This document shows, piece after piece, positions 30,956 through 63,784 of a stretch of 64,000 bases of DNA. The notes below the pieces were generated by a model, which saw only the letters and a program-made list of their open reading frames with translations, did no database searches and was not told the origin of the DNA. A program made the position numbers and the translations under genes. The stretch covers positions 124,001-188,000 of the IMG/VR virus record IMGVR_UViG_3300030419_008158; one strand, 5' to 3'. Position 1 is the stretch's first letter, and the number at the start of each line of letters is the position of its first letter.

Positions 30956-30970
30956 TTTATCTCTCCAATG

Positions 30971-42655: not shown

Positions 42656-42881
42656 CGAAGTGATTGGGTGCCTCGACTAACTTATTTATGAAAGTACATG
42701 CAGAATCATAAAGTGCTTCTTTTTTGGACATTCTATTCAATTCAACCGCGTATCTAACGATGCCGCTTATAGTGCCTAGAGAAAGCAAAACTATGGAAAG
42801 TGTAACACTTTGAGAAAAAGAAAGTGCTCCACATGCAATTAGAGTTTCTGAAACAAACCCTTTCATTAGCTGTCTCTCCAT
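42624..42881 (-). CDS. Small membrane protein
   Basis: Two hydrophobic stretches in the N-terminal half. Confidence 0.55.
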   Translation of the reverse strand: MERQLMKGFVSETLIACGALSFSQSVTLSIVLLSLGTISGIVRYAVELNRMSKKEALYDSACTFINKLVEAPNHFDVSAFSKEIH

Positions 42882-44797: not shown

Positions 44798-44850
44798 ATT
44801 ACAAATCTCCAGCGCCATGGCATCTTATAAAACATAGGAAGACGATAAAA

Positions 44851-49005: not shown

Positions 49006-49442
49006 TATAGTTCTAGTTCCATCATTTTCTGCACCATAGACTTAGAAATGTTAATCTTAAGCTCTGTGGTAGAGAAATTATGATTTCTTTCAATAAAATA
49101 GACAGGTTTTTCGTAGTGTGCTCCAGTGTAATCTTCTCTGTCGCGATAGTCACTACCTAAAATTCTGACGTCGTAATTTTCCTGTCCCAGGACTTTGTCT
49201 AATTCTTTCTCTGTGTTATATGTGACAATCTTATCAACATAGCGAATTGACTCCAATATTTCAATTCTATCACTCAGGGATTGTACTGGCTTGCATTTTT
49301 CAGGCCTGTCGATAGTGGGATCCCCTTGAAGAGCAACAGTAACATTTTCACAAACGCTTTTTGCCTCTTTAAACATTCTAATATAGCCTGGATGAATTAC
49401 ATCAAACGAGCCACAAATAATTCCGCATGTATAAATTTTCAT
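49005..49442 (-). CDS. Cytidylyltransferase (TagD-like)
   Basis: GSFDVIHPGY, YVDKIV, LGSDY, FSTT. Start moved to 49442 (ATGA overlap). Confidence 0.85.
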   Translation of the reverse strand: MKIYTCGIICGSFDVIHPGYIRMFKEAKSVCENVTVALQGDPTIDRPEKCKPVQSLSDRIEILESIRYVDKIVTYNTEKELDKVLGQENYDVRILGSDYRDREDYTGAHYEKPVYFIERNHNFSTTELKINISKSMVQKMMELEL

Positions 49443-50059
49443 ATTATTGCATCCACCAGCCCTAGCTCCAAACATCTTTCAGAGGGTAACCAAAGCTCAT
49501 GCTTCAATAGCTCTTCAAGAGATTCTTCGTCAATCTTTGATGTTTCAAGATAAATTTTCTTTATTGTATCAAATATAACTTTTTGATTTTCTATTTCGTC
49601 AATAAACTCGTCATGCTTACCAGCCCATAAAATTTGAGGCTGATGGATTAGCATAAATGATCTTTTGCTAATATAACGTTTTTTACCTCTTGAAGATATC
49701 AATGTTGCCGCAGATGCAGCTGAGCCCTCAACGTATGTGTAAACATCAGTCTTGCATCTATCAATTGCATCACAAATATTTAGTCCAGAAAATACATCTC
49801 CGCCCGGACTTTGTATATGCAAATGAATGGGTGGATTCTTTCTAAGACCAATTCTTGCTGCTAAATAAGACATTTCTATGTCTAGACGTCTTATGATTCG
49901 AACTAATTCGAATGCTTCTTTATCTGTTACAGCTGCATAAAAATATATGTGGTTCTCTTCAACATCAATGCCGCTAGGTTTTCCTTTTTCTTCTGACATT
50001 AGCAAGGACGCAATGTTCTCACTCATCTCATCAGAAATCACTGCTTGATCTTCGTTCAT
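49439..50059 (-). CDS. clpP: ClpP-like serine protease
   Basis: IQSPGGDV, GSAASAAT (catalytic Ser), MLIHQP (His), ELWL...CLELGLVD. Start moved to 50059 (ATGA overlap). Confidence 0.85.
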   Translation of the reverse strand: MNEDQAVISDEMSENIASLLMSEEKGKPSGIDVEENHIYFYAAVTDKEAFELVRIIRRLDIEMSYLAARIGLRKNPPIHLHIQSPGGDVFSGLNICDAIDRCKTDVYTYVEGSAASAATLISSRGKKRYISKRSFMLIHQPQILWAGKHDEFIDEIENQKVIFDTIKKIYLETSKIDEESLEELLKHELWLPSERCLELGLVDAII

Positions 50060-50502
50060 TCGGTAGAATCGTCGTCTATTTTCAGAAGAGGATAATCTCC
50101 GAATGACGTTTTTACTATTGCGCATTTTACTCCTTCAAAAGCGTTATTAGGTAGACTTTTTGCATTAATAATCAAAATTTCAAATTTAGCTGTAGTTGAA
50201 ATGTGATTTCTGTCATTATCTAGATTTGAAATTTTTGGAATACAAGTCGCCCGATAATAGTTCATCATTCCATCTTTCCAGATATTTGATGTTTCGTCTA
50301 CTTTTTCTCCTTGAAAGACTTTCCACACAGATGGATTTCTGTCAGAATAGTCACCGCAGCATAAAAAAAACCTTAGGTCATCGTAGAGATCATCTGGGAC
50401 ATCTGGAACATCGCCTACAGGTGTCATATATTGATACTCTTTTTCAACGACTAAAAGATCCAGCGGAGAAAATAAGTTTCGTATTTTTTCTAATTCGTTC
50501 AT
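50056..50502 (-). CDS. Hypothetical protein
   Basis: Overlaps clpP by 4 nt; no recognised motif. Confidence 0.6.
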   Translation of the reverse strand: MNELEKIRNLFSPLDLLVVEKEYQYMTPVGDVPDVPDDLYDDLRFFLCCGDYSDRNPSVWKVFQGEKVDETSNIWKDGMMNYYRATCIPKISNLDNDRNHISTTAKFEILIINAKSLPNNAFEGVKCAIVKTSFGDYPLLKIDDDSTE

Positions 50503-50527: not shown

Positions 50528-51316
50528 ATGAAAAAAAACTATATCAGTCTAATTCTATTACTAATGTGTCTTTTTTTCACACAATGTGGTGTACATGGAA
50601 AATACACAGGTCCCACTCCAGCAATTTACAAGCTTGTTGAAACCCAGACAGTACTTGTTGAAGTCACAAATACGATTACACCAACGCGGTGTGAAAATAA
50701 ATCTAATTTTGCAAAGAAAGAAGACCTTTGCTCAAAAGTTTTGCCCGAACTTCCACCCATACACGGATCACATGTGGGAACAGGAACATTTATCAAGTTG
50801 AACGATGAAATAGTTGTTTTGACTGCAGAGCATGTATGTGCCCCAGACGAAGTTCCGAAAAAAGTAGAAAAAGATGACGTAGTCGTTTATCCGACAATTG
50901 AAACAAAAATTGAAATTAAGTCGAGAATTTATACGGGTGTTGGCTCTGTGTTAAAAATGAGCAAACCTCTGGACATATGTGTTTTGTCGCTAGACGTCCA
51001 GCCTAATGTTTCTGTTCCTAACTTTTCAAGAAAACCACCCGAAAGAGGTGCTAGAATATACTACGCCGGAGCGCCGCAGGGGTTCATGTCGGATACTGCC
51101 CTAATGATGTTTGATGGAAGATATGCGGGAACCATGGGGAAAATGCTAGCATTTTCAATGCCCTGTGAGCACGGAACCTCAGGTGCCAGTGTTAGAAATA
51201 GTAAAAATCAAATATTTTCGATAGTGCAAAGAGTGAACGGTCAGTTCAAGCATATGTGTTACGGTGTTAGCACAGAAGAGATGATAAAATTCTTAAGTAC
51301 TATAAAGCCTAAGTAA
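50528..51316 (+). CDS. Secreted/lipoprotein trypsin-like serine protease
   Basis: Signal-like N-terminus ending FFTQC; LTAEHVC (His), DICVL (Asp), HGTSGA (Ser). Confidence 0.82.
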   Translation: MKKNYISLILLLMCLFFTQCGVHGKYTGPTPAIYKLVETQTVLVEVTNTITPTRCENKSNFAKKEDLCSKVLPELPPIHGSHVGTGTFIKLNDEIVVLTAEHVCAPDEVPKKVEKDDVVVYPTIETKIEIKSRIYTGVGSVLKMSKPLDICVLSLDVQPNVSVPNFSRKPPERGARIYYAGAPQGFMSDTALMMFDGRYAGTMGKMLAFSMPCEHGTSGASVRNSKNQIFSIVQRVNGQFKHMCYGVSTEEMIKFLSTIKPK

Positions 51317-51599
51317 TTTCTTTGGACGTAGAATTCATATAGTCAACTCGATGCTTGTCTATGATCATTCTTGCCATGTGCTTAGCGTCACTTTCTGATG
51401 CGTGTCTAGATGTGTGCATTAGTTTTTTATCCTTAAAAGAAATATCCATAAGGTAAGAACCGTCTGCTTGTGGGTAATATTCTATTTCGTAATCCTGAAA
51501 ATTGTCCCATGTATTGGGATCCGGATCAACTGTGTGATAGTTTCTTCCAATTTCTTCTAGAATAATCTCTCTAATTGTAGCCAAGAGAACTTTTTTCAT
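51309..51599 (-). CDS. Hypothetical protein with degenerate leader
   Basis: MKKVLLATIREIILEE N-terminus; TAATG overlap. Confidence 0.7.
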   Translation of the reverse strand: MKKVLLATIREIILEEIGRNYHTVDPDPNTWDNFQDYEIEYYPQADGSYLMDISFKDKKLMHTSRHASESDAKHMARMIIDKHRVDYMNSTSKEIT

Positions 51600-52271: not shown

Positions 52272-53561
52272 CTATGCTCCACCACTGCACGACTCAGTTG
52301 ATAGATCGCTATCGTCGACTTCTATAAACTTTTCACTCTCGTGCTCTTCATCATCTTCTCTCATTCCCGAAACTTTGCTAATCATATCAGGAATCGGACA
52401 ATCACCAACATCAACTTCAAGAAACTTTTTTGCAGTTGCAGCACGTGCCATGGGAGCTGTCATCGACTTGTGTACAACAGTTGCAGCTGCAATTTTCCCC
52501 GGGTCACTATTTTTTTCTGCTTCCAGCAAAACTTTTCTTATAATTTTTCTAAGAACAGATTCAGACAGCATAAGATTTCTTTTCATAGTTTTTGTCTCTC
52601 CAATTGTACAGCTATGTGTGGGCTGGGTTGGCAATTCTCCTTTGGAAAATTCGTAGTTATATATTTCCAGCTCAGTACCTTCTGCGTTCTCAGAAGCCTC
52701 ATTATCACAAAGTTGAGCAACTCTTCGAGCATTTTCTGGATCGTCATCATAAAAGTGTATGTTATCGATGGAAGGATTGTGAATCTTACCAATTAGATCT
52801 CTCTTCGCTGATGCAGGATCACTGGGATTGAAATCAGCTGCGCCATAGACGACGTCAGCATTCGATCCGATTTCTGACGCCAAAAAATCCTGTATATCAG
52901 ATGCGTTAGTTGCAGGAACTTTACCTCCACCTAGTGTATCTAGATCGGTCTTTCCTTTTCTTGCTGTAACAACAGCGGTCATGTCGCCTGATGCTTCAGC
53001 ATCTAGGAACACATCTAGCATACTGTCTATTGGTTCTACTTCTGTGCCAATTGTACTTGATGGACTAAAGTCAGCAATGTGTATTTCGCCTGTTTTACCC
53101 TGGTCAAACATCTCTCGCCCGGCGCTTCGAATATCGTTGCTTATGTTGGGATTTACAACCAAACGAACATGTTCACCAGAAGGTATATACTTTTCTTTCC
53201 AGTCTCTATACTGCTCTGTGTCTAGAACAATCGCTTCAGCGTCATCTAGTTCATCATTGCTTCTAACAGTATTTCCTGATAGCCCTGGAGAGTTTACGTT
53301 TTTTTGAGCCGGCGTGCTGAGGTTTTTTACTTTTGATCCCACACGCGAATTTAGATTTTTTATGGGAATATACGATGAAGGGTCATCAGGGTCTCCACCG
53401 TTATATTCGACAGCTGCGACAAGTGTCGGTGAGGTGGTTACACCCAAAGTATCATCGAAATCAAAGACATGCAAATCTCTCTCCGGACTTTTTACTTGAT
53501 CCTCGTCCTGTTCTTGTAAAATTCCAGCTAGTTTACACCATCGATTGATAACTGCATCCAT
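52272..53561 (-). CDS. HAD-family hydrolase with N-terminal RWxKLAG motif and internal leader module
   Basis: VFDFDDTL, VTAR, FYDDDPEN; MDAVINRWCKLAG start; internal MKRNLMLSESVLRKIIRKVLLE. Confidence 0.8.
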   Translation of the reverse strand: MDAVINRWCKLAGILQEQDEDQVKSPERDLHVFDFDDTLGVTTSPTLVAAVEYNGGDPDDPSSYIPIKNLNSRVGSKVKNLSTPAQKNVNSPGLSGNTVRSNDELDDAEAIVLDTEQYRDWKEKYIPSGEHVRLVVNPNISNDIRSAGREMFDQGKTGEIHIADFSPSSTIGTEVEPIDSMLDVFLDAEASGDMTAVVTARKGKTDLDTLGGGKVPATNASDIQDFLASEIGSNADVVYGAADFNPSDPASAKRDLIGKIHNPSIDNIHFYDDDPENARRVAQLCDNEASENAEGTELEIYNYEFSKGELPTQPTHSCTIGETKTMKRNLMLSESVLRKIIRKVLLEAEKNSDPGKIAAATVVHKSMTAPMARAATAKKFLEVDVGDCPIPDMISKVSGMREDDEEHESEKFIEVDDSDLSTESCSGGA

Positions 53562-53590
53562 GAATAATTCTCCGAGTCACTTATGTTTGC

Positions 53591-53598
53591 TAAATATC
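53591..53598 (-). promoter_or_regulatory. GATANTTA putative late-promoter motif
   Basis: GATATTTA 29 nt upstream of ATG 53561. Confidence 0.5.
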
Positions 53599-53770
53599 TC
53601 TCCGGAGATAAATTTGACACGGCGAACGAGAATTTATTTAGTGACAACTCTGTGAAAACAGACAGCAGCCAAAATAATCACGGTGAATCATTCGCTTCTT
53701 TTATGAGTGTTTCTATATATTGTCGCAAACAATGAACCAGAGAGCTTTTTAGCAGCCTCTGTGATCAATT

Positions 53771-54835
53771 CTATGAAAGCGTTCCTGCTAGCTTGTTCCA
53801 TCTTTCAAGAAGAATATTTCCGCTGTTTCTTGTTCGCGACTCAGTTTTAGTCTTATTACCCAAAGCGTTGCCGATGGCAGTCAAGAATTTAAGAGTCTTC
53901 TGGGGATCTCCTAAAGCTTGCAAGTTTACTTGCCCGGCAGTTCCCATTGAAGCAGATGGATCATTGAACATGGTGGCAGCCCATCGATGGTGACCATCAA
54001 GAATCTCTCCGTTGGTGCCTGCCCAGGCGTCTAGATCTCCACCTGCTATTTGATTTTTAGGGTTCATTGCCATACCCAAAGCTTTGTAAATAAGAATATT
54101 AGACTGTGTAGGAATAGCGTCAGAAGCATTAAGCGATCCCCCCGCTTTTATTTCGATCTTGTCGTCTGTGTCATCTCCGTCATCAAGACCTGCAGTCATA
54201 AACTCTTTTGCACCTGGCGCATCCATGCCGACAAATTTATTTGGCGGAGGGGGCTCACCACCTTTGAGGTTAGAACTTTCTTCTTTTTCCTCTTCTTGCT
54301 CCATGAGAGCGCGCGCGCCCACCTTCCATGCTGCCTCCTTGAACGGAGCAGTAACATCAATATTATAGTCTCCGCCCGGTGTAAGAGCGTCTTCAACGTC
54401 AGAAACTTCCCCCTTAGCATCTTCGGGCCCGGGTAAGAAAGGCATGACACTTTTTGGTAATCCAGTGGAAGGAATTTTGGAAGCTAATGTGTTTAGGCGC
54501 TTGACAAACGTTTCAGGGCCAATCTTTTCAATCCATTCCTTAGCTTGCGCACCGTTAGTTTCATACCACTCGCCTTTCGTAATAGCTACGATTGGTGCGT
54601 CATCATCCCCAGAAAGAAGTTGGTTTGCGATTTCAACAGCATCTACATCTTTTACATTCGTCGTCTTATCAACCGAGGTTCCCTTAGGAGCATCTCCAAT
54701 TTTTCCAGATGCTTCTTTTTTCTCCTGGCCTTCCTCTTCTTGCTCAAAAAGAATCTTACTTAATTTCGGCAATTGGCTTGATGTGTCTTCATTTATGACA
54801 TGTCTTACTATTCTTCTTAGGTCGCTTTTCTTCAT
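53771..54835 (-). CDS. ParB/Srx-like (DGHHR) protein with leader and C-terminal RWxKLAG
   Basis: MKKSDLRRIVRHVINE; IPTQ...ILDGHHRWAA; LLERWNKLAG. Confidence 0.7.
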   Translation of the reverse strand: MKKSDLRRIVRHVINEDTSSQLPKLSKILFEQEEEGQEKKEASGKIGDAPKGTSVDKTTNVKDVDAVEIANQLLSGDDDAPIVAITKGEWYETNGAQAKEWIEKIGPETFVKRLNTLASKIPSTGLPKSVMPFLPGPEDAKGEVSDVEDALTPGGDYNIDVTAPFKEAAWKVGARALMEQEEEKEESSNLKGGEPPPPNKFVGMDAPGAKEFMTAGLDDGDDTDDKIEIKAGGSLNASDAIPTQSNILIYKALGMAMNPKNQIAGGDLDAWAGTNGEILDGHHRWAATMFNDPSASMGTAGQVNLQALGDPQKTLKFLTAIGNALGNKTKTESRTRNSGNILLERWNKLAGTLS

Positions 54836-54866
54836 TTTTCTCCCTAGGGATTTACGTTGTGATGAC

Positions 54867-54874
54867 TAAGTATC
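54867..54874 (-). promoter_or_regulatory. GATANTTA putative late-promoter motif
   Basis: GATACTTA 31 nt upstream of ATG 54835. Confidence 0.5.
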
Positions 54875-54876
54875 TT

Positions 54877-56361
54877 CTAGTCCTGAAAAATTCCTGCCAG
54901 CTTTTGCCAGCGTTCAACAATCAAGTTATCTTTTTCTAGATTTGATTCTTTCTTAAAGGGCGGGACAACATTATACTCACCGGCAGGAAGCCCTTTTTCA
55001 ATTTTTGCCAAACCTGAGGAGCCTCCAATAGACTCGTGATCTAACTGCGGCATATCTTCTCTAGATTTTGGCGCGCCATCTAGCGGTTGAGGCAGAGATC
55101 CTAAATTTTCTCCCACTTTGCTGGCAATTGCTTTTCTGATGGGGTCGTTTTCAAATCCTGTTCCTGAGTCTGCCAAAGAGACAAACTCTTCATCTCCTGT
55201 TAGACCGGCCCACTCATTTATTTTAGGGTGCTTTCCGTCTGCAATTGACTTAATCATAGCATCATTCAGCAGCGGCCCCGGGGCCTTTTCATCAGTCTGC
55301 TTACCTTTGTTTGCGTCTATCATGGCAACAATTGCATCTTTGCTTTTTCCGATGATGTCAGTTGCTGCTCCACCTCCTTTTGATGGATGCTGTCCGCTAT
55401 CATTGACAGCGGCAACTGCAAGCTGCGCTGCTGCCAGCTTATCAGCCACACTCCCGGGAAAACCAAAATCTTTTGCATTTATCGATCCGTCCGGCGTAAT
55501 AGCAAAAACGCCCGACCAGCGATGATGTCCGTCCAAAACAGCATTTCCGGAAATAGATATCGCTCCTGGTGCACCAGAAGTCTTGCTGGTAATTGCACTT
55601 TCTAGAACTTTTGCACTTCCTAAAGGAAATGAAACAGATTGCATCAAATCAATGAACTGCTGCGTAGGTCCTAGACTGCTTACGCTCACAGGAGTAGCAC
55701 TCCCTACTGTAATCTTATCATCCGGCTCTGCACCGTCATCAGCTTCAGCAGCTTTGACAAGAACATCCTGAACACCCGGGTCTTTATTTCCTTGTGCATC
55801 CATGAATGCTCGAACCCCCTCAGGTCCTGCTTTATATGCTGTTTCAAGATCTTTTCCTGGATCGCCAGTGACCTCTGGAGATTCTTTTTCTTCTTTGTCT
55901 TCTTGTTCAAAAAGGTTTCTCATTTCTGAGAGAATTATTTTTCGCAAGTCTTTGCTGTCAATTTTCTTAGTAGGTTTTGTAAAACCCAATGCTTCAGAAA
56001 GTGTAATTTTTCCCATGAATTTATTCTCCATTCTTCTTCCCATACCCGACCTTGTTGGCAACTCAATGTCATACTCACCTGGCATTAAATCTTGAATTCT
56101 ACGTTCCATTTCAATGTATTCTAGGTCTTGTATCACTTGTTCTTCTCGGGCACGATTAACAGCAGCGTATTCTTCCCAAATTTCATCTACAGCGGATTCT
56201 GCCTCTTCCATTGTTTCGAACATTGGAATTTTAGGTCGACGACCGTACAATTCTTTGTACATGTCAGAATACATGCCACCCAAATCTTGCAACTTTTGAT
56301 CATACTCGGCGTCTGCTGTGTCTCTAGGGTGCAATTCTCTAATAAGTTTGCTCAGGTGCAT
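54877..56361 (-). CDS. ParB/Srx-like (DGHHR) protein with N-terminal extension, internal leader and C-terminal RWxKLAG
   Basis: Start moved to ATG 56361 (AAGGAG SD); DLRKIILSE; LGPTQ...VLDGHHRWSG; IVERWQKLAG. Confidence 0.7.
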   Translation of the reverse strand: MHLSKLIRELHPRDTADAEYDQKLQDLGGMYSDMYKELYGRRPKIPMFETMEEAESAVDEIWEEYAAVNRAREEQVIQDLEYIEMERRIQDLMPGEYDIELPTRSGMGRRMENKFMGKITLSEALGFTKPTKKIDSKDLRKIILSEMRNLFEQEDKEEKESPEVTGDPGKDLETAYKAGPEGVRAFMDAQGNKDPGVQDVLVKAAEADDGAEPDDKITVGSATPVSVSSLGPTQQFIDLMQSVSFPLGSAKVLESAITSKTSGAPGAISISGNAVLDGHHRWSGVFAITPDGSINAKDFGFPGSVADKLAAAQLAVAAVNDSGQHPSKGGGAATDIIGKSKDAIVAMIDANKGKQTDEKAPGPLLNDAMIKSIADGKHPKINEWAGLTGDEEFVSLADSGTGFENDPIRKAIASKVGENLGSLPQPLDGAPKSREDMPQLDHESIGGSSGLAKIEKGLPAGEYNVVPPFKKESNLEKDNLIVERWQKLAGIFQD

Positions 56362-56382
56362 GATTTTCTCCTTCACTAGCAG

Positions 56383-56390
56383 TAAATATC
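56383..56390 (-). promoter_or_regulatory. GATANTTA putative late-promoter motif
   Basis: GATATTTA 21 nt upstream of ATG 56361. Confidence 0.5.
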
Positions 56391-56405
56391 ATGCAAAGAA
56401 AAAAG

Positions 56406-58499
56406 CTACTCAGGATTGCAAATCTCAGAAAGAATTTGCATTAAAGAGCCGTACATTTGTGTAGCGTTGCTAGACAGTTGAAAATACTCACCTGAACATG
56501 TGGAAGCAATTTCATCCCACTCCCATGATTCGTTAGTAGAAAAAGTGTATATCTTGGTTTTGGGCGCACTGATACAAGCATTTTTTATCTGCTCTACAGA
56601 AATCTCAGGTATCATGTAGCTTTGCTCTTCTTCATCGCTGAACACGATAATGATTTTATCAGCAGTCGGTCTCCAGCCAATTGTAAACACGTCTTTTGGT
56701 GGGATTGACTCACCGACATCTGTGTCCCACTCTGTTGCACTCATATCCATGTTTGCACCAGAAGAAATATTATGCAAAGACAAGTATATTCCATCAAGAA
56801 GCATCTCACTTCCTGTGTTCATTCCGTCGCTTCCAAGCGCAGCAAATGCTGCTAGAAAGTCCGGAAAGGGTGCAATATCTGACACTAGAATTAATCTTTC
56901 TTCAAATTCTCCTGCAAGTTGTTTCGGACCAACAATAAGACCCCAGTGTAACTTATCTTCAAGGGAATAGTAGGCAGCAAATTGATTTAATGCAATTAGA
57001 ACAGCTTCGATTTCATCAATCATCGAGCCAGACCAATCGATAACAAAAAGAATATCAGTTTCTGGTACTTCTTTTCCCCAGTCAACTTGTCCATCACAGT
57101 CATCATCAATTCCGTTACATTCTTCCGGCTTGGGTAGTACTTGATCTGCGCACATATTATCGATAAAGATATTATCTGACGTGTATGAACCCCAGGATCC
57201 CATATTGCACGTCATATTGCCTGCTTCGCAGATTCCTATGCCTAAAGTACCCTCTGGGCCTGTGTAACAATCTGCAATAAGACCCTCATCAATAAGAGTG
57301 TTGCAGTTGTCATCAAAGTTATTACACTTCTCTTCATTTAGAGGCATACCGACCAAGGAGTCACAAGCTGGGTCTGAGCCGGGAGGATCAACTAGCCAGT
57401 GGCAAATAGCGTAGCAAGGTGATAGAACAATCTCTTCACACCCAGGATCATTACAAAGACATGTCTTATATCCCTGGCCGCACAAGAGTGGCGGCTCAAA
57501 ACAGGGTAGAAGCTTTCCAACGTCTTGCACTGTGCATAGACACTCTATTCCATCGTCTATCAAGCCGTTACAATCGTCATCAAACCCGTTGCAAATCTCA
57601 GGCATTGGTTGCTTGGCTGTGCAACCACTCCAGTTTCCTGCGACGCAGACTTTGACCCCGACACCACATGCCGTGCTACACTCTTCTATTAGCTCATCAT
57701 CAACAAACCCATTGCAATCATTGTCGATCCCGTCGCATTCTTCAGCCGGAACTGCTCCGCACTCATCGCATGCGTTTCTTTGACCTTCGTCAATTTCACC
57801 ATCACAGTCATTGTCTGCATAATCACAAATTTCTTCTTGAGGTATGGGCCCGTAACAGACAAAGACACCGTCTTCACATATGGCATTCCCAGGCCCACAC
57901 TCATTTTCACAGGGTTCCACACCGATATCTTCGTCTGTAAGGCTATCACAGTCATTATCTTGTCCGTCACAAATTTCTTCTGTGCAGTCTTGACAGTCTG
58001 AAAAGTAAAGCTTGCCCTTGTCACAAACAACGTTTTGTTTACCGAGGGACCCATCTTCCATTTCACAATACTGCCACCCATAATCTAATGTCTGTGCACC
58101 TGGAGGACACTCGTATGCTTCGTAACATTCTCCCATAAAAAGAATTTGAGGTGGATCACATTCGTTTATTCCTAGAGGTTTACAAGGAACGTCTGAATCG
58201 TGACAAAAGTTTAGAACGACCTGCTTCTTCTCCATTGTAGGTTCACCGAATACAGGTGGACAAAACCATTCTTGTGTTTCACAACACTGAGGTTTGCAGC
58301 TGCACCACATAAACTGATCCTCTATTGTGATAGTTGCACAGGGATCTACATCTTCGGGAGGTGTGTCTGGTGTGTCGACATTCCTGGGATCTGTATCTAT
58401 TACAACTTGTGTGCTAGAAACATCTACCGGACTGCCACGGTCGTCGGCACAACCAACAACAAATAATAACGTAAGCGCCAGTGAGACAATTTTATTCAT
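56406..58499 (-). CDS. Lipoprotein with six Cys/Asp-rich (MopE-like) repeats and a C-terminal vWA domain
   Basis: MNKIVSLALTLLFVVGC lipobox; 6 x E.C.G.D.DC.G..DE; DILFVIDWSGSM MIDAS; FSDEE. Confidence 0.82.
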   Translation of the reverse strand: MNKIVSLALTLLFVVGCADDRGSPVDVSSTQVVIDTDPRNVDTPDTPPEDVDPCATITIEDQFMWCSCKPQCCETQEWFCPPVFGEPTMEKKQVVLNFCHDSDVPCKPLGINECDPPQILFMGECYEAYECPPGAQTLDYGWQYCEMEDGSLGKQNVVCDKGKLYFSDCQDCTEEICDGQDNDCDSLTDEDIGVEPCENECGPGNAICEDGVFVCYGPIPQEEICDYADNDCDGEIDEGQRNACDECGAVPAEECDGIDNDCNGFVDDELIEECSTACGVGVKVCVAGNWSGCTAKQPMPEICNGFDDDCNGLIDDGIECLCTVQDVGKLLPCFEPPLLCGQGYKTCLCNDPGCEEIVLSPCYAICHWLVDPPGSDPACDSLVGMPLNEEKCNNFDDNCNTLIDEGLIADCYTGPEGTLGIGICEAGNMTCNMGSWGSYTSDNIFIDNMCADQVLPKPEECNGIDDDCDGQVDWGKEVPETDILFVIDWSGSMIDEIEAVLIALNQFAAYYSLEDKLHWGLIVGPKQLAGEFEERLILVSDIAPFPDFLAAFAALGSDGMNTGSEMLLDGIYLSLHNISSGANMDMSATEWDTDVGESIPPKDVFTIGWRPTADKIIIVFSDEEEQSYMIPEISVEQIKNACISAPKTKIYTFSTNESWEWDEIASTCSGEYFQLSSNATQMYGSLMQILSEICNPE

Positions 58500-58563
58500 G
58501 CTATGTTAAACATTATAAAATTGTCGAAACAGTAAAAAGAAAAATTATCTAATAGTCAAATGA

Positions 58564-59967
58564 TTACACTTTGATTCTATCAATTGTCTGTGGATAGCTT
58601 ACAGCAATATCTTTGTAAAGCTTCTTCATCACTGCTTTCGTAATATTTGCCAGCTCTTCTTTTGTTGCTTTGTTCTTAAGAATTTTCTCTACTTCTGTCT
58701 TGATGGTTTTTTGCAGATCTTTTCCAACAACTTTTGTAATTTCTTTTTGTGCTTCTTTTCTAGAAATCCTTTCGATTTCTTTCATGTCTGTTTTGGTAAA
58801 TTTTTCTACCAAAAGTATCTCTCTTACATGTCTTCTAAAGCGAAGCTCTTCTTGGATATAGCTTTGAGCAATTCGACTATATCCTGCTGCAAGCCTAAGC
58901 TTTTGTTCGGGAGGTTGTTCTCTAGACAACCCTAGTTTATCAATGATAAGGGAGATCACTTCTTGCATGTCATCTCTAGTCAGACCCCTAACATACGCTT
59001 TTACTTGCTGCATAAATTGTTTTCTGTCAGCCGGCTCAGCAAACGCTCGATCCTCAGACCCAACTGTTTTCATTAGATTTTTTGCAGTTTTTTCGAAAAG
59101 TTGATCCGGATCCATAACTTCCAAAGATGCTATTTGAGATCCTGCGCCCTCAGTTTGACCACCTTCAGAGTTTTGACCATCCGACCCTAAAATTATCTCC
59201 ATATTCTTCTTGTTTAGGCGCCCATCAGACATGCCAAGTTTTTTTACTAGCTGCTTCTTGACTGCTTTAATAAGATCGTCAGCATCAGCCGGCTTTTTTG
59301 TAAGAGCATCTAAAAGTCTGTTTCGAAGATTTTCTAAAGGTTTACCCTGGGTTATCTCTACGGGTTCTTGTGGAAGATGTTTTACGATATTGTTTACAAC
59401 TCCCTCTCTGCTGATTGGTGCAGTCACGTGCCCCCAACGAATTATAACATTTTCGTCGTTTCCAGTTTTTATGACCCCGATATTACCTAGCATTTTCTTA
59501 TCAGGTTCTTTTATGATAAGTGCAAGAATAGATTCAATTTTTGGCGAGGAGCTTGATGTGGCTGCAGAAAAATTATCGTCTGCACGATATGAAGAAAAAG
59601 AAGACTTGACAGAATAGTAAACACCGTCCTTATCAGCATCATAAAAAGTTGTGACACCTGCACTACCTTGATCTTCTACACCAAAACCCCAAAACTGGAG
59701 CATTTTTTCGGCAATTGACTGCCACGCATTTTTATTCCCGCTCTCAGTCGCAACAGAGTGAACTAATTCATTGAATACCAGAACCTCTGAAAGCAGCTTA
59801 TCAGCGTCACCAGCTCGGGCAATATTCTCAGCGTATTTTGGTATATTGATATCGTATGCTACTGGAATATCAACACTGACACTCCCAGCAGCGCCTGCAT
59901 CCATTTTCAATACTTTTTCGGATAAGATTACATTTCTTATCCAAGACTTTAAGAGCCTCTTTTTCAT
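58564..59967 (-). CDS. Hypothetical protein with leader-like N-terminus and internal leader-like module
   Basis: Start moved to 59967 (MKKRLLKSWIRNVILSE); late segment LRFRRHVREILLVE. Confidence 0.7.
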   Translation of the reverse strand: MKKRLLKSWIRNVILSEKVLKMDAGAAGSVSVDIPVAYDINIPKYAENIARAGDADKLLSEVLVFNELVHSVATESGNKNAWQSIAEKMLQFWGFGVEDQGSAGVTTFYDADKDGVYYSVKSSFSSYRADDNFSAATSSSSPKIESILALIIKEPDKKMLGNIGVIKTGNDENVIIRWGHVTAPISREGVVNNIVKHLPQEPVEITQGKPLENLRNRLLDALTKKPADADDLIKAVKKQLVKKLGMSDGRLNKKNMEIILGSDGQNSEGGQTEGAGSQIASLEVMDPDQLFEKTAKNLMKTVGSEDRAFAEPADRKQFMQQVKAYVRGLTRDDMQEVISLIIDKLGLSREQPPEQKLRLAAGYSRIAQSYIQEELRFRRHVREILLVEKFTKTDMKEIERISRKEAQKEITKVVGKDLQKTIKTEVEKILKNKATKEELANITKAVMKKLYKDIAVSYPQTIDRIKV

Positions 59968-59968
59968 T

Positions 59969-60565
59969 TTAGAAAAGCTCTTCATTTTTTGGGTCATGCT
60001 TGACCAGAATCTTCTTCATAACAGCAACTTGTTTATCTGACATGCGTCTGCCGGATTTCATTTGATCTGCGAGGCTTTGCAAGAAATTATTGGTCTTAAC
60101 AGACAGGTAATCTTCGATAGCTGCTAATTGTTTCCCTCTTACAGAGCCGGCCATTGGAGGTATATTTTTTCTTCGCCTCCATGGCGGACTAGTCCCGAGA
60201 TAAGTCTCACCACCATATTTTTGACCAAAGGCTGCACCTCTGCGCGATACGTTACCTTCATCATCGTAGATATTACCCTCGGCGTCGACGTATTGTTCGT
60301 ATTCCAGCAGCATTAATTCACGACGAACAATGCGTCGAAGTTCATTCTCAGAAAGAAGTGGTTCTTGAGCTGGAAGAGACTCCGGAGATTTTGTAGTAGC
60401 TTCAGACCCTACAGCCTTTGAGTGATCTATGTCTAACTCTAGATTTTTTGCTGTACCCTCAATGTCTCCGGACCACGCATCTTCAACGGGCTCCACATCA
60501 GAAGGGTGTTCTTCATCTAGCATTTCTAAGATAATTTTTTTGAGCTGCTTTTTTGTAATTTTCAC
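59969..60565 (-). CDS. Leader-bearing multi-module hypothetical protein
   Basis: GTG start at 60565 with GGAG SD (MKITKKQLKKIILE); second LSENELRRIVRRELMLLE module. Confidence 0.75.
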   Translation of the reverse strand: MKITKKQLKKIILEMLDEEHPSDVEPVEDAWSGDIEGTAKNLELDIDHSKAVGSEATTKSPESLPAQEPLLSENELRRIVRRELMLLEYEQYVDAEGNIYDDEGNVSRRGAAFGQKYGGETYLGTSPPWRRRKNIPPMAGSVRGKQLAAIEDYLSVKTNNFLQSLADQMKSGRRMSDKQVAVMKKILVKHDPKNEELF

Positions 60566-60581
60566 TTTAGAATCTCCATTC

Positions 60582-60920
60582 TTAAATAAAGGCACCTAGT
60601 TCTATTTCGGTTGCTCTGTCTTCTGCCCACTCCTCTATGTCGAGTGGACCGATAAAGCCGTTCTGCGGGGGTGTGTAGTCAAGCCATGTTCGATTCGGGG
60701 CACCGGCGCGCTGTGCTAGGTCGTCTAGATCTTCAAATCCAAGACCTCTCTGGTCCAGCCACTCTCCCCAACCATGCATGAGCTTCTCGTCCGTTTTTTG
60801 TTCACCCTCCCCACCGGGTGCATAGTAATCTTCTTCACCGGGAGGAGCAGAGAAATCTCTATCATCATCGGCCCATGCTTCCCTGATGATTCGCCTGAGC
60901 TGTCGCTTAGTGATTCTCAT
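60582..60920 (-). CDS. Leader-bearing hypothetical protein
   Basis: MRITKRQLRRIIRE followed by an acidic body. Confidence 0.8.
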   Translation of the reverse strand: MRITKRQLRRIIREAWADDDRDFSAPPGEEDYYAPGGEGEQKTDEKLMHGWGEWLDQRGLGFEDLDDLAQRAGAPNRTWLDYTPPQNGFIGPLDIEEWAEDRATEIELGAFI

Positions 60921-60924
60921 ATGA

Positions 60925-61149
60925 TCATCTGCCTCTGCGCAAGACTTTAACAGTTACGCCCTTGACATCACCGGTCATAATATAAAGTTCGCCGGGTGCA
61001 TCACCTTTTTCAACAGTTGCCACCCCTTTGTTTATTCTATTCTGTAAATCAGCTGCCAATCTTTCTGGAGTCTCCTCCAGATCAGGTAAGTGACTTGCAT
61101 CTAGCATTTCCTGAATGATTTGTTTTAGCTTTTTCTTTGAGATTTTCAT
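60925..61149 (-). CDS. Leader-bearing hypothetical protein
   Basis: Start moved to 61149 (TAATG overlap); MKISKKKLKQIIQE. Confidence 0.8.
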   Translation of the reverse strand: MKISKKKLKQIIQEMLDASHLPDLEETPERLAADLQNRINKGVATVEKGDAPGELYIMTGDVKGVTVKVLRRGR

Positions 61150-61412
61150 TATCTCATCCTCTGAATTTTTTCTAACATTAGATTCTTGCATTCTCTCTTG
61201 ATTCCGGGTGAGCGAAAGCTGCCACCAATACGCACAGCCTCGCTGATACAATGCTGGATCAGTTCGTCGATGGACATTTCAACATGTGCTAAGAGGTCTG
61301 ATCTTGCTTCATCTTCATCAGCAGAGATTGTGCCATCAGGATTCATTTCATTGAGAATCTTGACTTTCTCTTCTTTAATAATTCTTCTGAGTTGCTTCTT
61401 TGTGATTTTCAT
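61149..61412 (-). CDS. Leader-bearing hypothetical protein
   Basis: MKITKKQLRRIIKEE; GGGAG SD. Confidence 0.8.
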   Translation of the reverse strand: MKITKKQLRRIIKEEKVKILNEMNPDGTISADEDEARSDLLAHVEMSIDELIQHCISEAVRIGGSFRSPGIKRECKNLMLEKIQRMR

Positions 61413-61414
61413 TG

Positions 61415-62140
61415 TTATCTCCCGCTAACCTTTCTATACATCGCCTTATGAAGAGAATTAACCATAGGTTCAAGGTCTGTCCCGTACAACACAGGCATAA
61501 CCCTGTCTTCAAGATCATAAATGGCTTGTTGTATTTTTGCGTTATTTTGAAGTTCGTATTGCTCTGCGTTGGCGTCTTCTTGTAGCTCTTCTTTGATAAT
61601 TCTTCTGAGTTGTCGTTTTGTGATCTTCATTCTGTTTTTTCCTTCAATCTTATATTCGTCGCGACCTACTTCAAAATCTTCATCATCTGGCTCTTCGATG
61701 CCAGCGGCTATAGCCTTTTTGTTTTCTACATCCGCTACGGGGGAATCATCAGCGACGTAACCCACACCAGTATTACTTGCAGGTGAAACGTCGTATGGAG
61801 GTTTCGGTGCCGGATTCTTACTGAGTGACGGGTGTCCGGCATAGAGGCTCCAGTCGATTGGCTCGTCGACAGGCACCTCTACTTTTGGGCCGAACCTTTG
61901 ATTATCCGGATGGTAGTTATCCTCCGCGACGCCTCGGGCCGCCTGGTCAGCGGTTTGAAACATATGATTTAGAGACCCAACTCCCATAAACGGCCGGCCC
62001 TGCGCCTTGCCCAGCCAGTCGGTGGCCGCTTGTTTTGACCCCTTTGCCGGCCAGAATGGTGCGTGCTTATCTCGCCTCTCGAGAAGACGGGCCTTCTCTT
62101 CTTTGATGATTCTTCTGAGTTGTCGCTTTGAGATTCTCAT
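61415..62140 (-). CDS. Leader-bearing hypothetical protein with a second complete internal leader
   Basis: MRISKRQLRRIIKEE; in-frame MKITKRQLRRIIKEE from ATG 61630. Confidence 0.8.
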   Translation of the reverse strand: MRISKRQLRRIIKEEKARLLERRDKHAPFWPAKGSKQAATDWLGKAQGRPFMGVGSLNHMFQTADQAARGVAEDNYHPDNQRFGPKVEVPVDEPIDWSLYAGHPSLSKNPAPKPPYDVSPASNTGVGYVADDSPVADVENKKAIAAGIEEPDDEDFEVGRDEYKIEGKNRMKITKRQLRRIIKEELQEDANAEQYELQNNAKIQQAIYDLEDRVMPVLYGTDLEPMVNSLHKAMYRKVSGR

Positions 62141-62143
62141 TAT

Positions 62144-62344
62144 CTATGCTTCTGCCTCTATAGTACCTTGTTCATATCCAGCATCATACGCCTGTGGATA
62201 TGTTGAGCGATCAGCATCGTTTGGATACCCCTGATAAGCATCATCATACCCGCGATCGTACTCTTGATCTTCATCCCTGTTGGGGCTCATCATTCTAATC
62301 TCTTCCTTGATGATCCTTCGCAGTTGTCGCTTGGTGATTCTCAC
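62144..62344 (-). CDS. Leader-bearing small acidic protein
   Basis: GTG start with GAGGA SD; MRITKRQLRRIIKEE; YDxGY repeats. Confidence 0.78.
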   Translation of the reverse strand: MRITKRQLRRIIKEEIRMMSPNRDEDQEYDRGYDDAYQGYPNDADRSTYPQAYDAGYEQGTIEAEA

Positions 62345-62357
62345 GGTTTATCCTCTT

Positions 62358-62966
62358 TTAAGCTCTAAAGGCATCTCGAACATAGTCGGTTGCGTAGTCA
62401 ACGGCAGATTCCTTTTCGCCCTCAGACTCGGCGTACTCAATATTAGCAAGGGCATCGAGTGCCTCATCAACCTCAAACCCCGTACCCAAGTTTCGAACCA
62501 TGTCTTCCAATTGAGCCAATGTTGCTGAATCGTTAGGGTTTCGTGATAGCTTGCTCAGCAGATCACTAGCTTGATCGTAAGTTGCTCGGCCACCAGATCG
62601 ATTGTCGTCTACTACGTCCTGCACAAATGCGATCATTTGGTCAATAGGTTGTGATGGAGTATCAGAGTCTTCTTCGGAAACTGTGTGATAGCCTGCAGCT
62701 TTAAGAGTGTTTAGCGACTGCAACTGTGCTTCAACACCGTCACGGGGCACCGGGCCGCCACCAAACTGCCTAGCAACATCATCATCGGTCATTGCGACGT
62801 TATTTCCGTCTAGATACCAAAAACCCTGTGCTAAATCAGCATGACCCTTTTTGTCCATCTGCTCCATCAATCTTCTGCGCACAATTCTACGAATCTTCTG
62901 CTCAGCCAGAACTTTGGCTTTCTCTTCTTTGATGATTTGTCTTAGTTGTCGCTTGGAGATTTTCAT
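62358..62966 (-). CDS. Hypothetical protein with extended double leader
   Basis: MKISKRQLRQIIKEEKAKVLAEQKIRRIVRRRLMEQ; AAGGA SD. Confidence 0.8.
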   Translation of the reverse strand: MKISKRQLRQIIKEEKAKVLAEQKIRRIVRRRLMEQMDKKGHADLAQGFWYLDGNNVAMTDDDVARQFGGGPVPRDGVEAQLQSLNTLKAAGYHTVSEEDSDTPSQPIDQMIAFVQDVVDDNRSGGRATYDQASDLLSKLSRNPNDSATLAQLEDMVRNLGTGFEVDEALDALANIEYAESEGEKESAVDYATDYVRDAFRA

Positions 62967-62981
62967 GTTGTTTTTTCCTTC

Positions 62982-63371
62982 TTACGTCATCTCGACAAAT
63001 TCGTCAAAGTCACCAGCTGCGTAAGGATCACCCCCTGCATACCAGTTGACAAACCAGTCCTTGAGCATTCCAACATCACCCGCGACGTCGAGCATGCTGT
63101 ACCCGCTTGGGCCGGTCCCCCTGTCTGTAAATCTCAGACCACGATATCGGGGGTTTCTTGTCATCTGCTTGAATGGACCACTCTCATCACGTATTTCCCC
63201 GTGTTCGTCCATCATGTCTAGGCCTCGAATTATTCCCTGTTGACCGGTTGGCTCAGCTGGTCCTCGCATCTTGATAGCTTGTTCAGCGATACGACGGACC
63301 TTCTGTTCAGCCAGGACCTTGGCTTTCTCTTCTTTGATAATTCTTCGAAGCTGTTTCTTTGTGATTCTCAT
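62982..63371 (-). CDS. Hypothetical protein with extended double leader
   Basis: Start moved to 63371 (TAATG); MRITKKQLRRIIKEEKAKVLAEQKVRRIAEQ. Confidence 0.8.
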   Translation of the reverse strand: MRITKKQLRRIIKEEKAKVLAEQKVRRIAEQAIKMRGPAEPTGQQGIIRGLDMMDEHGEIRDESGPFKQMTRNPRYRGLRFTDRGTGPSGYSMLDVAGDVGMLKDWFVNWYAGGDPYAAGDFDEFVEMT

Positions 63372-63784
63372 TAGAAAAAAGCTCCTATTATGTTTAGCCA
63401 TGTGTCAAGGGTAAATCTGTCGCCGGCATCTGGGTCCATTTCGTCCGCAAGCTCATCGTCCCTGACATGCGTTACACCGTATGTGGATCTAAGCCAGTTG
63501 GCCAGCGCGACATGATCAGCCTTTGAGTCCAGATCTCCTTCCCACCAGACTGTCTTAATGCCTGGCTTGAGCTCAGGATGTGAGTCTGGGTATTGAATTA
63601 CAATACCGGAATTTTCAAGAGTACCAAGGCCGCTGGGAGGCGATCTGTAGTCTATCACTAGTGTTTCACCACCAGCCTGCTCCAATAGTTTCCTGCGGAC
63701 AATTCGACGGACCTTCTGCTCAGCCAGAACTTTGGTCTTCTCTTCTTTGACTATTCTTCTAAGTTGTCTTTTTGTGATTTTCAT
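63371..63784 (-). CDS. Hypothetical protein with extended double leader
   Basis: Start moved to 63784 (AAGGA SD); MKITKRQLRRIVKEEKTKVLAEQKVRRIVRRKLLEQ. Confidence 0.8.
   Translation of the reverse strand: MKITKRQLRRIVKEEKTKVLAEQKVRRIVRRKLLEQAGGETLVIDYRSPPSGLGTLENSGIVIQYPDSHPELKPGIKTVWWEGDLDSKADHVALANWLRSTYGVTHVRDDELADEMDPDAGDRFTLDTWLNIIGAFF

What the first reader, a model, noticed from the sequence alone, without database searches (positions are those of the whole stretch)
52272..62140. In-frame internal restarts with their own SD: cassette fusions or protease-processed polyproteins
Seen: several ORFs contain a second leader mid-protein that starts at an in-frame ATG with its own SD-like site. 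ATG 61630 (MKITKRQLRRIIKEE) has AAGG upstream. ATG 56016 (MGKITLSE...DLRKIILSE) has GGAG 9 nt upstream. ATG 52586 (MKRNLMLSESVLRKIIRKVLLE) has GGAG about 11 nt upstream. Internal leaders without an ATG occur in 59969-60565 (LSENELRRIVRRELMLLE) and 58564-59967 (FRRHVREILLVE). Inference: neighbouring cassettes fused by stop loss are tolerated because the internal L-x-E site lets a maturation protease release the modules, or both long and short forms are made.
Basis: partly seen in the sequence, partly recalled or inferred. Interest (0 to 1): 0.65.

Follow-up and report, generated by a model that had tools for sequence, protein, structure and literature searches.

The report
Capsid-address leader cassettes, some fused
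A 284-kb T4-like jumbo phage carries dozens of small genes that share one N-terminal peptide resembling T4's capsid-targeting, protease-cut leader, and in several genes this peptide also sits mid-protein, where two interchangeable modules are joined into one reading frame.

Summary
Minus-strand ORFs at 52-64 kb begin with a near-invariant leader (consensus MKITKRQLRRIIKEEKA-LL-E). The leader recurs in frame inside ORFs.

- **Internal copies:** there is a perfect copy at 61630. Divergent but non-random copies lie at 60355, 56016-55924 and 52586-52521. The copy at 58839 is weak.
- **SD sites:** the three internal ATGs have the SD-like sites exactly as described.
- **Genome context:** the window is part of a circular 284-kb phage genome. 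That genome encodes a T4 gp21-family prohead protease, with its His and Ser conserved, and a gp23 capsid protein.
- **Cleavage motif:** in 254 of 263 leaders an [LI]-x-E motif ends at residue 14. 65% have a second such motif about 8 residues later. Proteins encoded between the protease and capsid genes start with leader-like peptides.
- **Split and fused forms:** metagenomic relatives show the same modules alone, joined to other modules, or in three-module ORFs, with junctions at the leader.
- **Start codons:** 4 of 22 internal leaders have lost the start codon but keep the peptide, so the constraint is on the protein.

My best reading is that these are T4-CTS-like targeting and cleavage peptides that flank shuffled cargo modules. 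Fused ORFs would then be protease-resolved polyproteins, and internal initiation probably also occurs. Cleavage and packaging are inferred, not shown. I class this as a new variant of a known kind.

The parts
61415..62140 (-). Two-module ORF (241 aa): leader, module A, linker, second full leader, module B
   Evidence: Relatives carry module A plus leader followed by other modules, module B after another module, and module B alone.
61586..61630 (-). Internal full leader (MKITKRQLRRIIKEE) starting at an in-frame ATG. An SD-like GAAGGA lies at 61640-61645.
   Evidence: HMM 43 bits, E 5.6e-12. The upstream string is nearly identical to that of the true start at 62966.
59969..60565 (-). Two-module ORF (198 aa) with a GTG start and a divergent N-terminal leader
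   Evidence: Module 1 stands alone in L042 and L070. Module 2 follows an N-terminal leader directly in P0008. L025 has a fused three-module version.
60302..60355 (-). Internal leader-like segment without a start codon (LSENELRRIVRRELMLLE)
   Evidence: PSSM rank 26 of 86,361. It aligns with the N-terminal leader of P0008 just before the shared module.
58564..59967 (-). 467-aa ORF with a leader-like N-terminus and a C-terminal module of about 90 aa
   Evidence: The C-terminal module is shared with a 662-aa protein in L011.
58804..58839 (-). Weak internal leader-like segment (FRRHVREILLVE)
   Evidence: PSSM rank 106 only. L011 has a clearer leader-like stretch at the same junction.
54877..56361 (-). 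Two-module ORF (494 aa): helical N-module, internal leader, DGHHRW (ParB/Srx-like?) module ending in RWxxLAG
   Evidence: Alignment A1. AF2 model: residues 15-92 and 222-430 are folded and 96-220 has pLDDT below 50. Foldseek top hits are weak matches to ParB-N.
55924..56016 (-). Internal split leader (MGKITLSE ... DLRKIILSE) at an in-frame ATG, with GGAG 9 nt upstream
   Evidence: PSSM rank 29. It aligns with the N-terminal leaders of stand-alone orthologues in L078, L005 and L010.
53771..54835 (-). Stand-alone paralogue: divergent leader plus DGHHRW module, C-terminal RWxxLAG
52272..53561 (-). 429-aa ORF: N-terminal RWxxLAG-LQE, HAD-like DxDxT module, internal leader, C-terminal module of about 80 aa
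   Evidence: Weak phrog_415 match. The orthologue in L078 is 76% identical up to residue 324 and then continues in frame with a different module.
52521..52586 (-). Internal leader-like segment (MKRNLMLSESVLRKIIRKVLLE) at an in-frame ATG, with GGAG 11 nt upstream
   Evidence: PSSM rank 35. No stand-alone homologue of the downstream module was found.
62144..63784 (-). Four single-module leader genes (starts at 63784, 63371, 62966 and 62344). Three carry a tandem second leader unit (K-[IV]-RRIVRR-x-LLEQ).
60582..61412 (-). Three single-module leader genes (starts at 61412, 61149 and 60920)
51309..51599 (-). 96-aa ORF with a leader-like N-terminus (…LLATIREIILEE)
   Evidence: Conserved in L078.
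49439..50125 (-). ClpP-like protease. It is the only protease of this kind inside the window and an alternative candidate for processing.
   Evidence: PF00574 at 93 bits; phrog_94 head maturation protease

Best explanation
The leader is the functional equivalent of the capsid-targeting sequence (CTS) of phage T4 internal proteins. It is a short basic amphipathic peptide that takes otherwise unrelated cargo modules into the prohead core. The gp21-type prohead protease then cuts it off after Glu14 (I-K-E), and often again after a second L-x-E about 8 residues later.

Each cassette consists of a leader plus a module. Cassettes are packed head to tail, with overlapping or near-overlapping stop and start codons, so the SD of each cassette lies in the coding end of the one before.

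Small indels, stop changes or recombination in the conserved leader join cassettes into one frame. The joined protein is still addressed by its first leader. The internal leader supplies the cleavage sites that separate the modules inside the prohead, so fusion costs little and can persist. Where the internal ATG or GTG and the SD are kept, the downstream cassette is probably also translated on its own.

**Shown:**
- the family and its conserved motif
- the protease and capsid genes
- the split, fused and swapped forms
- constraint on the peptide where the start codon has been lost

**Inferred:**
- targeting to the prohead
- cleavage at the leader
- internal initiation
For: **Genome context**
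- The genome is one circular contig of about 284 kb.
- It encodes a Peptidase_S77 (gp21) homologue at 92 bits. The residues aligned to T4 His85 and Ser140 are conserved (5jbl match).
- It encodes a Gp23 capsid protein. That protein's N-terminus has VLKE|A close to the position aligned with the T4 gp23 maturation site.

**Leader conservation**
- 263 distinct strong leaders were collected from this genome and about 40 IMG/VR contigs.
- E14 is present in 262 of 263, and [LI]-x-E ends at position 14 in 254 of 263.
- A second [LI]-x-E is present in 65%, against 8.8% in background windows.

**Link to the head module**
- ORFs between the protease and capsid genes start with leader-like peptides. In T4 the gp22 N-terminus likewise resembles the IP CTS.

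**Module shuffling at leaders**
-.

**Selection on the peptide**
- Synonymous codons vary at conserved residues.
- 4 of 22 internal leaders have ATA, GTA, ACG or ACT in place of the start codon while the rest of the peptide is intact.

**Structure**
- The inter-module region of the 494-aa ORF is predicted with low confidence, between two folded parts.

**T4 precedent**
- The T4 CTS is a 10-20 residue propeptide that is sufficient for packaging, and gp21 cuts after Glu (PMC9026906 section 2.6; PMC5694885).
Against: - There is no experimental evidence of packaging or cleavage, and no cultured relative carries the family.
- The leader has no sequence similarity to the T4 CTS.
- The complex prediction of protease with the junction peptide gave no answer.
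- The gp21 specificity in this lineage is inferred from T4 and from one aligned capsid site.
- A ClpP-like protease is also present.
- Some genes end in a leader 'stub' with no module behind it. The cleavage model does not need this feature.
- Module functions are almost all unknown.
Confidence: 0.6

Rival explanations
1. The fused ORFs are operon-like units in disguise. The functional products come from internal initiation at the retained SD plus ATG/GTG, and the long read-through forms are incidental by-products with no role. No protease is needed.
For: - 18 of 22 internal leaders keep ATG or GTG.
- 18 of 22 keep an SD-like 4-mer, against 16% in the background.
- In unfused neighbours the SD already lies inside the upstream ORF and must work there.
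- T4 itself uses in-frame internal starts in genes 21 and 17 (PMC9026906).
Against: - Four internal leaders have lost the start codon yet keep the full peptide.
- Internal leaders at 60355 and 58839 have no start codon at all.
- Fused junctions are conserved across relatives at about 80% identity.
- This rival does not explain the invariant Glu14 or the [LI]-x-E register.
Confidence: 0.2
2. The leader is a structural or binding helix that stays on the mature protein and is not removed. It could mediate coiled-coil oligomerisation, nucleic-acid binding or membrane binding. Multi-leader ORFs would then simply be multi-domain proteins with repeated helices.
For: - The peptide is basic and amphipathic with heptad-like hydrophobic spacing.
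- It occurs in tandem in three genes.
- It occurs as a C-terminal stub in relatives.
- The AF2 model predicts helices in the linker.
Against: - There is near-invariant [LI]-x-E at a fixed register in a genome with a gp21-type protease.
- The same peptide heads more than 30 unrelated small proteins, which fits an address label better than a shared structural role.
- Core or scaffold-region proteins share it.
Confidence: 0.15
3. The conservation is at the DNA or RNA level, for example a recombination site, a homing target or a translational control element, and the peptide is a passenger.
For: - Codon choice in the leader is biased away from the genome average. ATC is used for Ile in 65-74% of leaders against 20% genome-wide. 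This hints at shared DNA ancestry or gene conversion.
- Module swaps have their break points at the leader.
Against: - Leu8 uses five codons and Arg6 switches between CGA and AGA while the amino acids stay fixed.
- Divergent leaders keep the residue pattern rather than the bases.
Confidence: 0.05
4. The in-frame junctions are assembly or sequencing errors that removed stops or shifted frames.
For: The genome is a metagenome assembly, the leaders are repeats that could mislead an assembler, and reads could not be examined.
Against: - Independent assemblies from other samples carry the same fused junctions or equivalent ones.
- Multi-leader ORFs occur in 19 of the 392 leader-bearing reading frames across this genome and the IMG/VR stretches.
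Confidence: 0.02

Closest known systems
Capsid-targeting sequence (CTS) of phage T4 internal proteins IPI, IPII, IPIII, and the polymorphic IP locus of T-even phages
   Same: - A short N-terminal peptide is shared by otherwise unrelated small proteins.
- The peptide ends in hydrophobic-x-Glu.
- The genome has a gp21-family protease.
- The peptide resembles the N-termini of core or scaffold proteins.
- The downstream sequences are highly variable between relatives.

Sources: PMC9026906, PMC3012670.
   Different: - There is no sequence similarity to MKTYQEFIAE.
- The leader is longer (14-22 aa) and usually has two sites.
- This genome has more than 30 copies, against 3 IP genes in T4.
- Leaders also occur inside ORFs at module junctions, which is not described for the T4 internal proteins.
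Propeptides of ejection and inner-body proteins of phiKZ, 201phi2-1 and SPN3US giant phages
   Same: - Many head-packaged proteins are processed after Glu by a gp21-related protease.
- Propeptides carry redundant cleavage sites.
- Paralogues have identical N-terminal 15 residues.

Source: PMC5694885, PMC9026906.
   Different: - The cleavage motif there is A/S/G-x-E and the propeptides are often longer than 100 aa.
- There is no single leader shared by dozens of genes.
- Those phages are not T4-type in the rest of the head module.
Nested in-frame genes in phage head assembly (T4 genes 21 and 17; lambda C/Nu3, the latter from memory)
   Same: An SD plus start codon inside an ORF, in the same frame, gives a long and a short product (PMC9026906).
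   Different: In those cases both products share one fold or function. Here the internal start would give an independent cargo module, and several internal leaders have no start codon.
Protease-resolved viral polyproteins
   Same: Independent modules lie in one ORF, separated by a recurring consensus site for a virus-encoded protease.
   Different: Here the polyprotein state is optional and varies between close relatives. The linker is also a targeting peptide. Cleavage has not been demonstrated.

Membership tests
T4-type capsid-targeting-sequence (CTS) proteins | A short (10-20 aa) N-terminal peptide common to otherwise unrelated proteins | tested here: met
   More than 30 ORFs in this genome and 356 distinct copies overall share a leader of 15-22 aa. 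The downstream sequences are unrelated.
T4-type capsid-targeting-sequence (CTS) proteins | The peptide ends at a gp21-type cleavage site (hydrophobic-x-Glu) | tested here: met
   [LI]-x-E ends at residue 14 in 254 of 263 leaders. A second site is present in 65%, against 8.8% in the background.
T4-type capsid-targeting-sequence (CTS) proteins | The phage encodes a gp21-family (Peptidase_S77) prohead protease next to scaffold and gp23 genes | tested here: met
   PF03420 at 92 bits, with the residues aligned to T4 His85 and Ser140 conserved. PF07068 (gp23) at 215 bits lies about 4 kb downstream.
T4-type capsid-targeting-sequence (CTS) proteins | Sequence homology to the T4 CTS | tested here: not met
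   The T4 IPII and IPIII N-terminus (MKTYQEFIAE) and that of IPI show no similarity beyond the terminal x-E logic. This is an analogue, not a demonstrable homologue.
T4-type capsid-targeting-sequence (CTS) proteins | The peptide is necessary and sufficient for packaging into proheads and is removed by the protease | not testable with these tools
   This needs an isolate or a heterologous assay. The complex prediction gave no answer.
Protease-processed polyprotein | Independently occurring modules joined in one ORF and separated by a recurring protease consensus site | tested here: met
   The modules of the 241-, 198- and 494-aa ORFs occur alone or with other partners in relatives, and the junctions carry the leader.
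Protease-processed polyprotein | Demonstrated cleavage into separate mature products | not testable with these tools
   No proteomic data were available.
Nested in-frame internal start | An in-frame start codon with a ribosome-binding site inside the ORF | tested here: met
   Met for 61630, 56016 and 52586. Not met for 60355 and 58839, which have no start codon. Across the family 18 of 22 internal leaders keep a start and 4 do not.
Nested in-frame internal start | The short product is actually made | not testable with these tools

The most novel reading that the evidence does not exclude
Far-T4 jumbo phages of aquatic habitats devote about a tenth of their genes to a plug-and-play cargo system. 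One conserved leader would serve three roles at once:
- the capsid address
- the protease cut site
- the recombination joint

Dozens of effector modules could then be exchanged between phages and loaded either as single genes or as self-resolving polyproteins. A second, C-terminal address (RWxxLAG), shared with the scaffold-like protein, would load larger enzymes.
Probability: 0.4. Interest if true: 0.8.

Novelty: new variant of a known kind. Interest (0 to 1): 0.62.

Why it matters
If the leader is a capsid address with built-in cut sites, four things follow.

- This phage lineage would carry an unusually large and fast-shuffling set of proteins injected with the DNA. These are likely host-takeover or anti-defence factors. 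They can be listed from sequence alone because they all bear the same label.
- It would show that the T4 CTS principle is general beyond the T-even phages, and that it can work inside polyproteins.
- The 15-22 residue label could be used to load foreign proteins into capsids of such phages, as was done with T4.
- For annotation, it explains why gene callers disagree in these regions, and why 'fused' and 'split' versions should be treated as the same set of cassettes.

Tried and rejected
- **Family scans.** Pfam and PHROGs scans of the leader-bearing ORFs found no family for the leader or for nearly all modules.
- **Cultured phages.** tblastn of two leader proteins against 50,697 GenBank phage records found nothing, even at E 10. 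BLAST's low-complexity filter may hide the short basic leader.
- **Literature.** Text searches for the peptide strings gave zero papers. Searches on CTS with metagenomes found nothing on this family. Repoila et al. 1994 is not held, so I cite it only through PMC3012670 and PMC9026906.
- **Complex prediction.** Folding the gp21 homologue with the junction peptide (residues 150-205 of the 241-aa ORF) returned a 'no answer' verdict. This is not evidence either way.
- **Fold search.** Foldseek of the 494-aa model against PDB gave no hit at E <= 0.001. The weak top hits are ParB-N/Srx-type, so the 'ParB-like' label remains a lead.
- **Missing relatives.** No viral-contig relative was found for the 467-aa ORF. 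No stand-alone homologue was found for the C-terminal module of the 429-aa ORF.
- **Late promoter.** The T4 late-promoter motif TATAAATA is not enriched (4 on the coding strand in 284 kb), so expression timing could not be inferred.
- **RNA/DNA-level explanation.** I consider this largely rejected because synonymous sites vary.

Full report
**1. What is in the sequence**

All real genes in window 52-64 kb lie on the minus strand. Thirteen consecutive ORFs, interrupted only by a Cys-rich lipoprotein gene (56406-58499), begin with a leader or a divergent form of it. The canonical leader reads M-[KR]-I-[TS]-K-[RK]-Q-L-R-R-I-I-K-E-E.

The window is G000:C1:124001-188000 of a single 284,429-bp contig. 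Its first 40 bases recur at position 284,008, giving a 421-bp terminal overlap, so the genome is circular and about 284 kb.

I built an HMM from the strict copies. It finds about 40 leaders in the genome, all on the minus strand. They form two clusters, at 176-189 kb (the finding) and at 271-284 kb running over the contig end.

**2. The claimed internal copies**

- **ATG 61630.** This starts a perfect leader (43 bits, E 5.6e-12). It lies 171 codons into the 241-aa ORF.
- **Upstream strings.**
  - 61630: GAAGGA plus 10 nt, nearly the same as upstream of the true start at 62966.
  - 56016: GGAG plus 9 nt.
  - 52586: GGAG plus 11 nt.
  - Such SD-like 4-mers precede only 13-16% of internal codons in this genome.
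- **PSSM ranks.** I scanned an 8-residue core PSSM over 86,361 positions.
  - 60340: rank 26
  - 55947: rank 29
  - 52553: rank 35
  - 58839: rank 106

The first three sit just below the canonical leaders. The last is weak by itself.

One of the five elements depends on comparative support.

**3. What kind of phage this is**

- The genome encodes a Peptidase_S77 (T4 gp21) prohead protease. It scores 92 bits, is 34% identical to T4 gp21, and conserves the residues aligned to T4 His85 and Ser140.
- It encodes a Gp23 major capsid protein.
- These sit in a T4-like order: terminase, portal, protease, small proteins, a 543-aa acidic protein, then the capsid protein.
- The closest cultured capsid relatives are Flavobacterium phage immuto, Microcystis phage Mel-JY01 and Rhodothermus phage RM378, at 38-46% identity. 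This is a distant T4-type jumbo phage.
- The capsid protein has VLKE|A at residues 57-61. This is within a few residues of the position aligned to the T4 gp23 maturation site.

**4. The leader carries the T4 protease logic**

I collected 263 distinct strong leaders from this genome plus 67 IMG/VR stretches. The stretches were retrieved with the exact peptide pattern, which biases one copy per stretch but not its neighbours.

- Glu14 is present in 262 of 263.
- [LI]-x-E ends at residue 14 in 254 of 263.
- 65% have a second [LI]-x-E ending at residues 18-26, against 8.8% of background windows.

T4 gp21 cuts C-terminal to Glu at a short motif. The T4 CTS is a 10-20 residue propeptide that is sufficient to load foreign proteins into the head (PMC5694885; PMC9026906 section 2.6; PMC3012670). 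T4 IPII and IPIII start with MKTYQEFIAE, and T4 gp22 starts with MLKEQLIAE.

The parallel holds here. Two small ORFs between the protease and capsid genes start with leader-like peptides.

**5. Selection acts on the peptide**

- At conserved residues the codons vary. Leu8 uses five codons, and Arg6 uses both CGA and AGA.
- There is also a bias toward ATC for Ile that differs from the genome average. This is compatible with shared ancestry or gene conversion among leaders.
- Among 22 internal leaders with at least 60 open codons upstream, the first codon is as follows:

| First codon | Count |
|---|---|
| ATG | 14 |
| GTG | 4 |
| ATA | 1 |
| GTA | 1 |
| ACG | 1 |
| ACT | 1 |

- In the last four the rest of the peptide is intact at 32-41 bits. 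The internal leader is therefore kept for what it does in the protein, not only as a start site.

**6. Split, fused and swapped forms**

*241-aa ORF (61415-62140).*
- Module A plus the second leader is followed by three different modules in P0002, P0003 and the window.
- It is followed by a stop in P0004.
- Module B follows a different module in P0006 and P0007.
- Module B is a stand-alone leader gene in P0027 and P0028 (L082).
- Sources.

*198-aa ORF (59969-60565).*
- Module 1 stands alone in L042 and L070, where it ends in a leader-like stub.
- Module 2 follows an N-terminal leader directly in P0008, which then continues into two more leader-module units.
- L025 is a three-module fusion.
- Sources.

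*494-aa ORF (54877-56361).*
- Its internal leader aligns with the N-terminal leaders of stand-alone orthologues in L078, L005 and L010, and of the paralogue at 53771-54835.
- Its N-module is joined through a leader-like stretch to other modules in L013 and L032.
- Sources.

*429-aa ORF (52272-53561).*
- The syntenic orthologue in L078 is 76% identical up to residue 324, then continues in frame with a different module and ends in a leader stub.

*467-aa ORF (58564-59967).*
- Its C-terminal module is shared with a 662-aa protein in L011, where a clearer leader-like stretch precedes it.

Because independent assemblies share these junctions, assembly error is very unlikely. Reads could not be checked.

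**7. How fusions arise and why the SD is there**

Junctions between leader genes in this genome are overlapping (-4 or -1 nt) or 1-15 nt apart. Only 3 of 28 have the upstream ORF in the same frame. The SD of every cassette therefore already lies in the coding end of the preceding cassette.

A fusion needs one of three events:
- a small indel;
- a stop change in the few same-frame cases, for example 62144-62344 and 61415-62140, which are separated only by TAG-ATA;
- recombination within leaders.

SD-like 4-mers precede 18 of 22 internal leaders, compared with 71% of N-terminal ones and 16% of background positions. Since the same SD-ATG context works in the unfused state, internal initiation in the fused state is plausible. 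It is not shown.

**8. Structure**

An AF2 model of the 494-aa ORF was built from a 7-sequence alignment. Mean pLDDT is 56.
- A confident helical N-module spans residues 15-92.
- A moderately confident C-module spans residues 222-430.
- Residues 96-220, which include the internal leader, have pLDDT below 50.

This fits two independent folds joined by an exposed linker. Foldseek gave only weak hits, led by ParB-N/Srx-type folds. That agrees with the DGHHRW motif, but it is a lead only.

**9. Conclusion**

The ORFs are mosaics of leader-plus-module cassettes, and I hold this part with high confidence.

The most likely mechanism is that the leader is a T4-CTS-like address and cleavage peptide. 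Fused ORFs would then be resolved by the gp21-type protease, and internal initiation would provide a second route where the start codon survives. I put this at about 0.6.

No paper or cultured phage with this family was found.

Noticed in passing
window 53771-53803, 54877-54912, 53522-53561; G000:C1:78374-78406 and about 15200-15230: A second position-specific motif, RWxxLAG, lies 9-11 residues from the C-terminus of four proteins: both DGHHRW proteins, the 543-aa scaffold-like protein just upstream of the capsid gene, and a protein of about 464 aa. It also lies at the N-terminus of the 429-aa HAD-like ORF. Relatives keep it (L078, L004, L042, L050, L010). It may be a C-terminal capsid or scaffold address. 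About 0.14 occurrences are expected by chance and 6 were seen.
   Followed up: partly
window 62882-62909, 63700-63727, 63299-63320: Three leader genes carry a tandem second unit (K-[IV]-RRIVRR-x-LLEQ) straight after the canonical leader. The internal leader at 60355 belongs to this subtype.
   Followed up: partly
P0004 / L004:10505-10561; L042:2593-2859; L070:4717-4959; L078:3001-4494: Several relatives have genes that end in a leader or a leader-like 'stub' followed at once by a stop, with no module behind it. These may be scars of deletion or recombination, or C-terminal propeptides.
   Followed up: partly
window 56406-58499 (-): A 697-aa predicted lipoprotein sits in the middle of the leader cluster. 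It has a signal peptide ending in Cys, four MopE-type Cys-rich repeats (PF11617) and a C-terminal DxSGS stretch that looks like a VWA MIDAS motif. It has no leader and is conserved next to leader genes in L042.
   Followed up: no
window 42866-47321 (-): A PrkA, DUF444 (YeaH-like) and SpoVR gene trio is encoded by the phage. The best phage matches are Thermus phages, Ralstonia RsoM2USA and megaphage-size metagenomic records.
   Followed up: no
window 49439-50125 (-) and 50528-51316 (+): A ClpP-like protease with an N-terminal extension of about 90 aa is present in addition to the gp21-type protease. A trypsin-like predicted lipoprotein is the only plus-strand gene in this stretch and is conserved in L078.
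   Followed up: no
window 27698-38041 (-): Two very large ORFs (2356 and 1085 aa) lie in a block of higher GC, 0.46 against about 0.38. The larger one ends in an endosialidase-type tail-spike chaperone domain (PF12219), so it is probably a tail fibre.
   Followed up: no
L013 (IMGVR_UViG_GVMAG-S-1030632-100_000001): One contig carrying the leader family is labelled as a giant-virus MAG. Its content, leader cassettes homologous to this phage, suggests a phage contig binned with a eukaryotic giant virus.
   Followed up: no
L086:6782-7024 (T4 gene 67): T4 prohead core protein gp67 contains ...DLIKEEKIAIARNFLIE..., which resembles the second half of the leader (IIKEEKA-LL-E). This could be chance or a distant echo of a shared core-association motif.
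   Followed up: no
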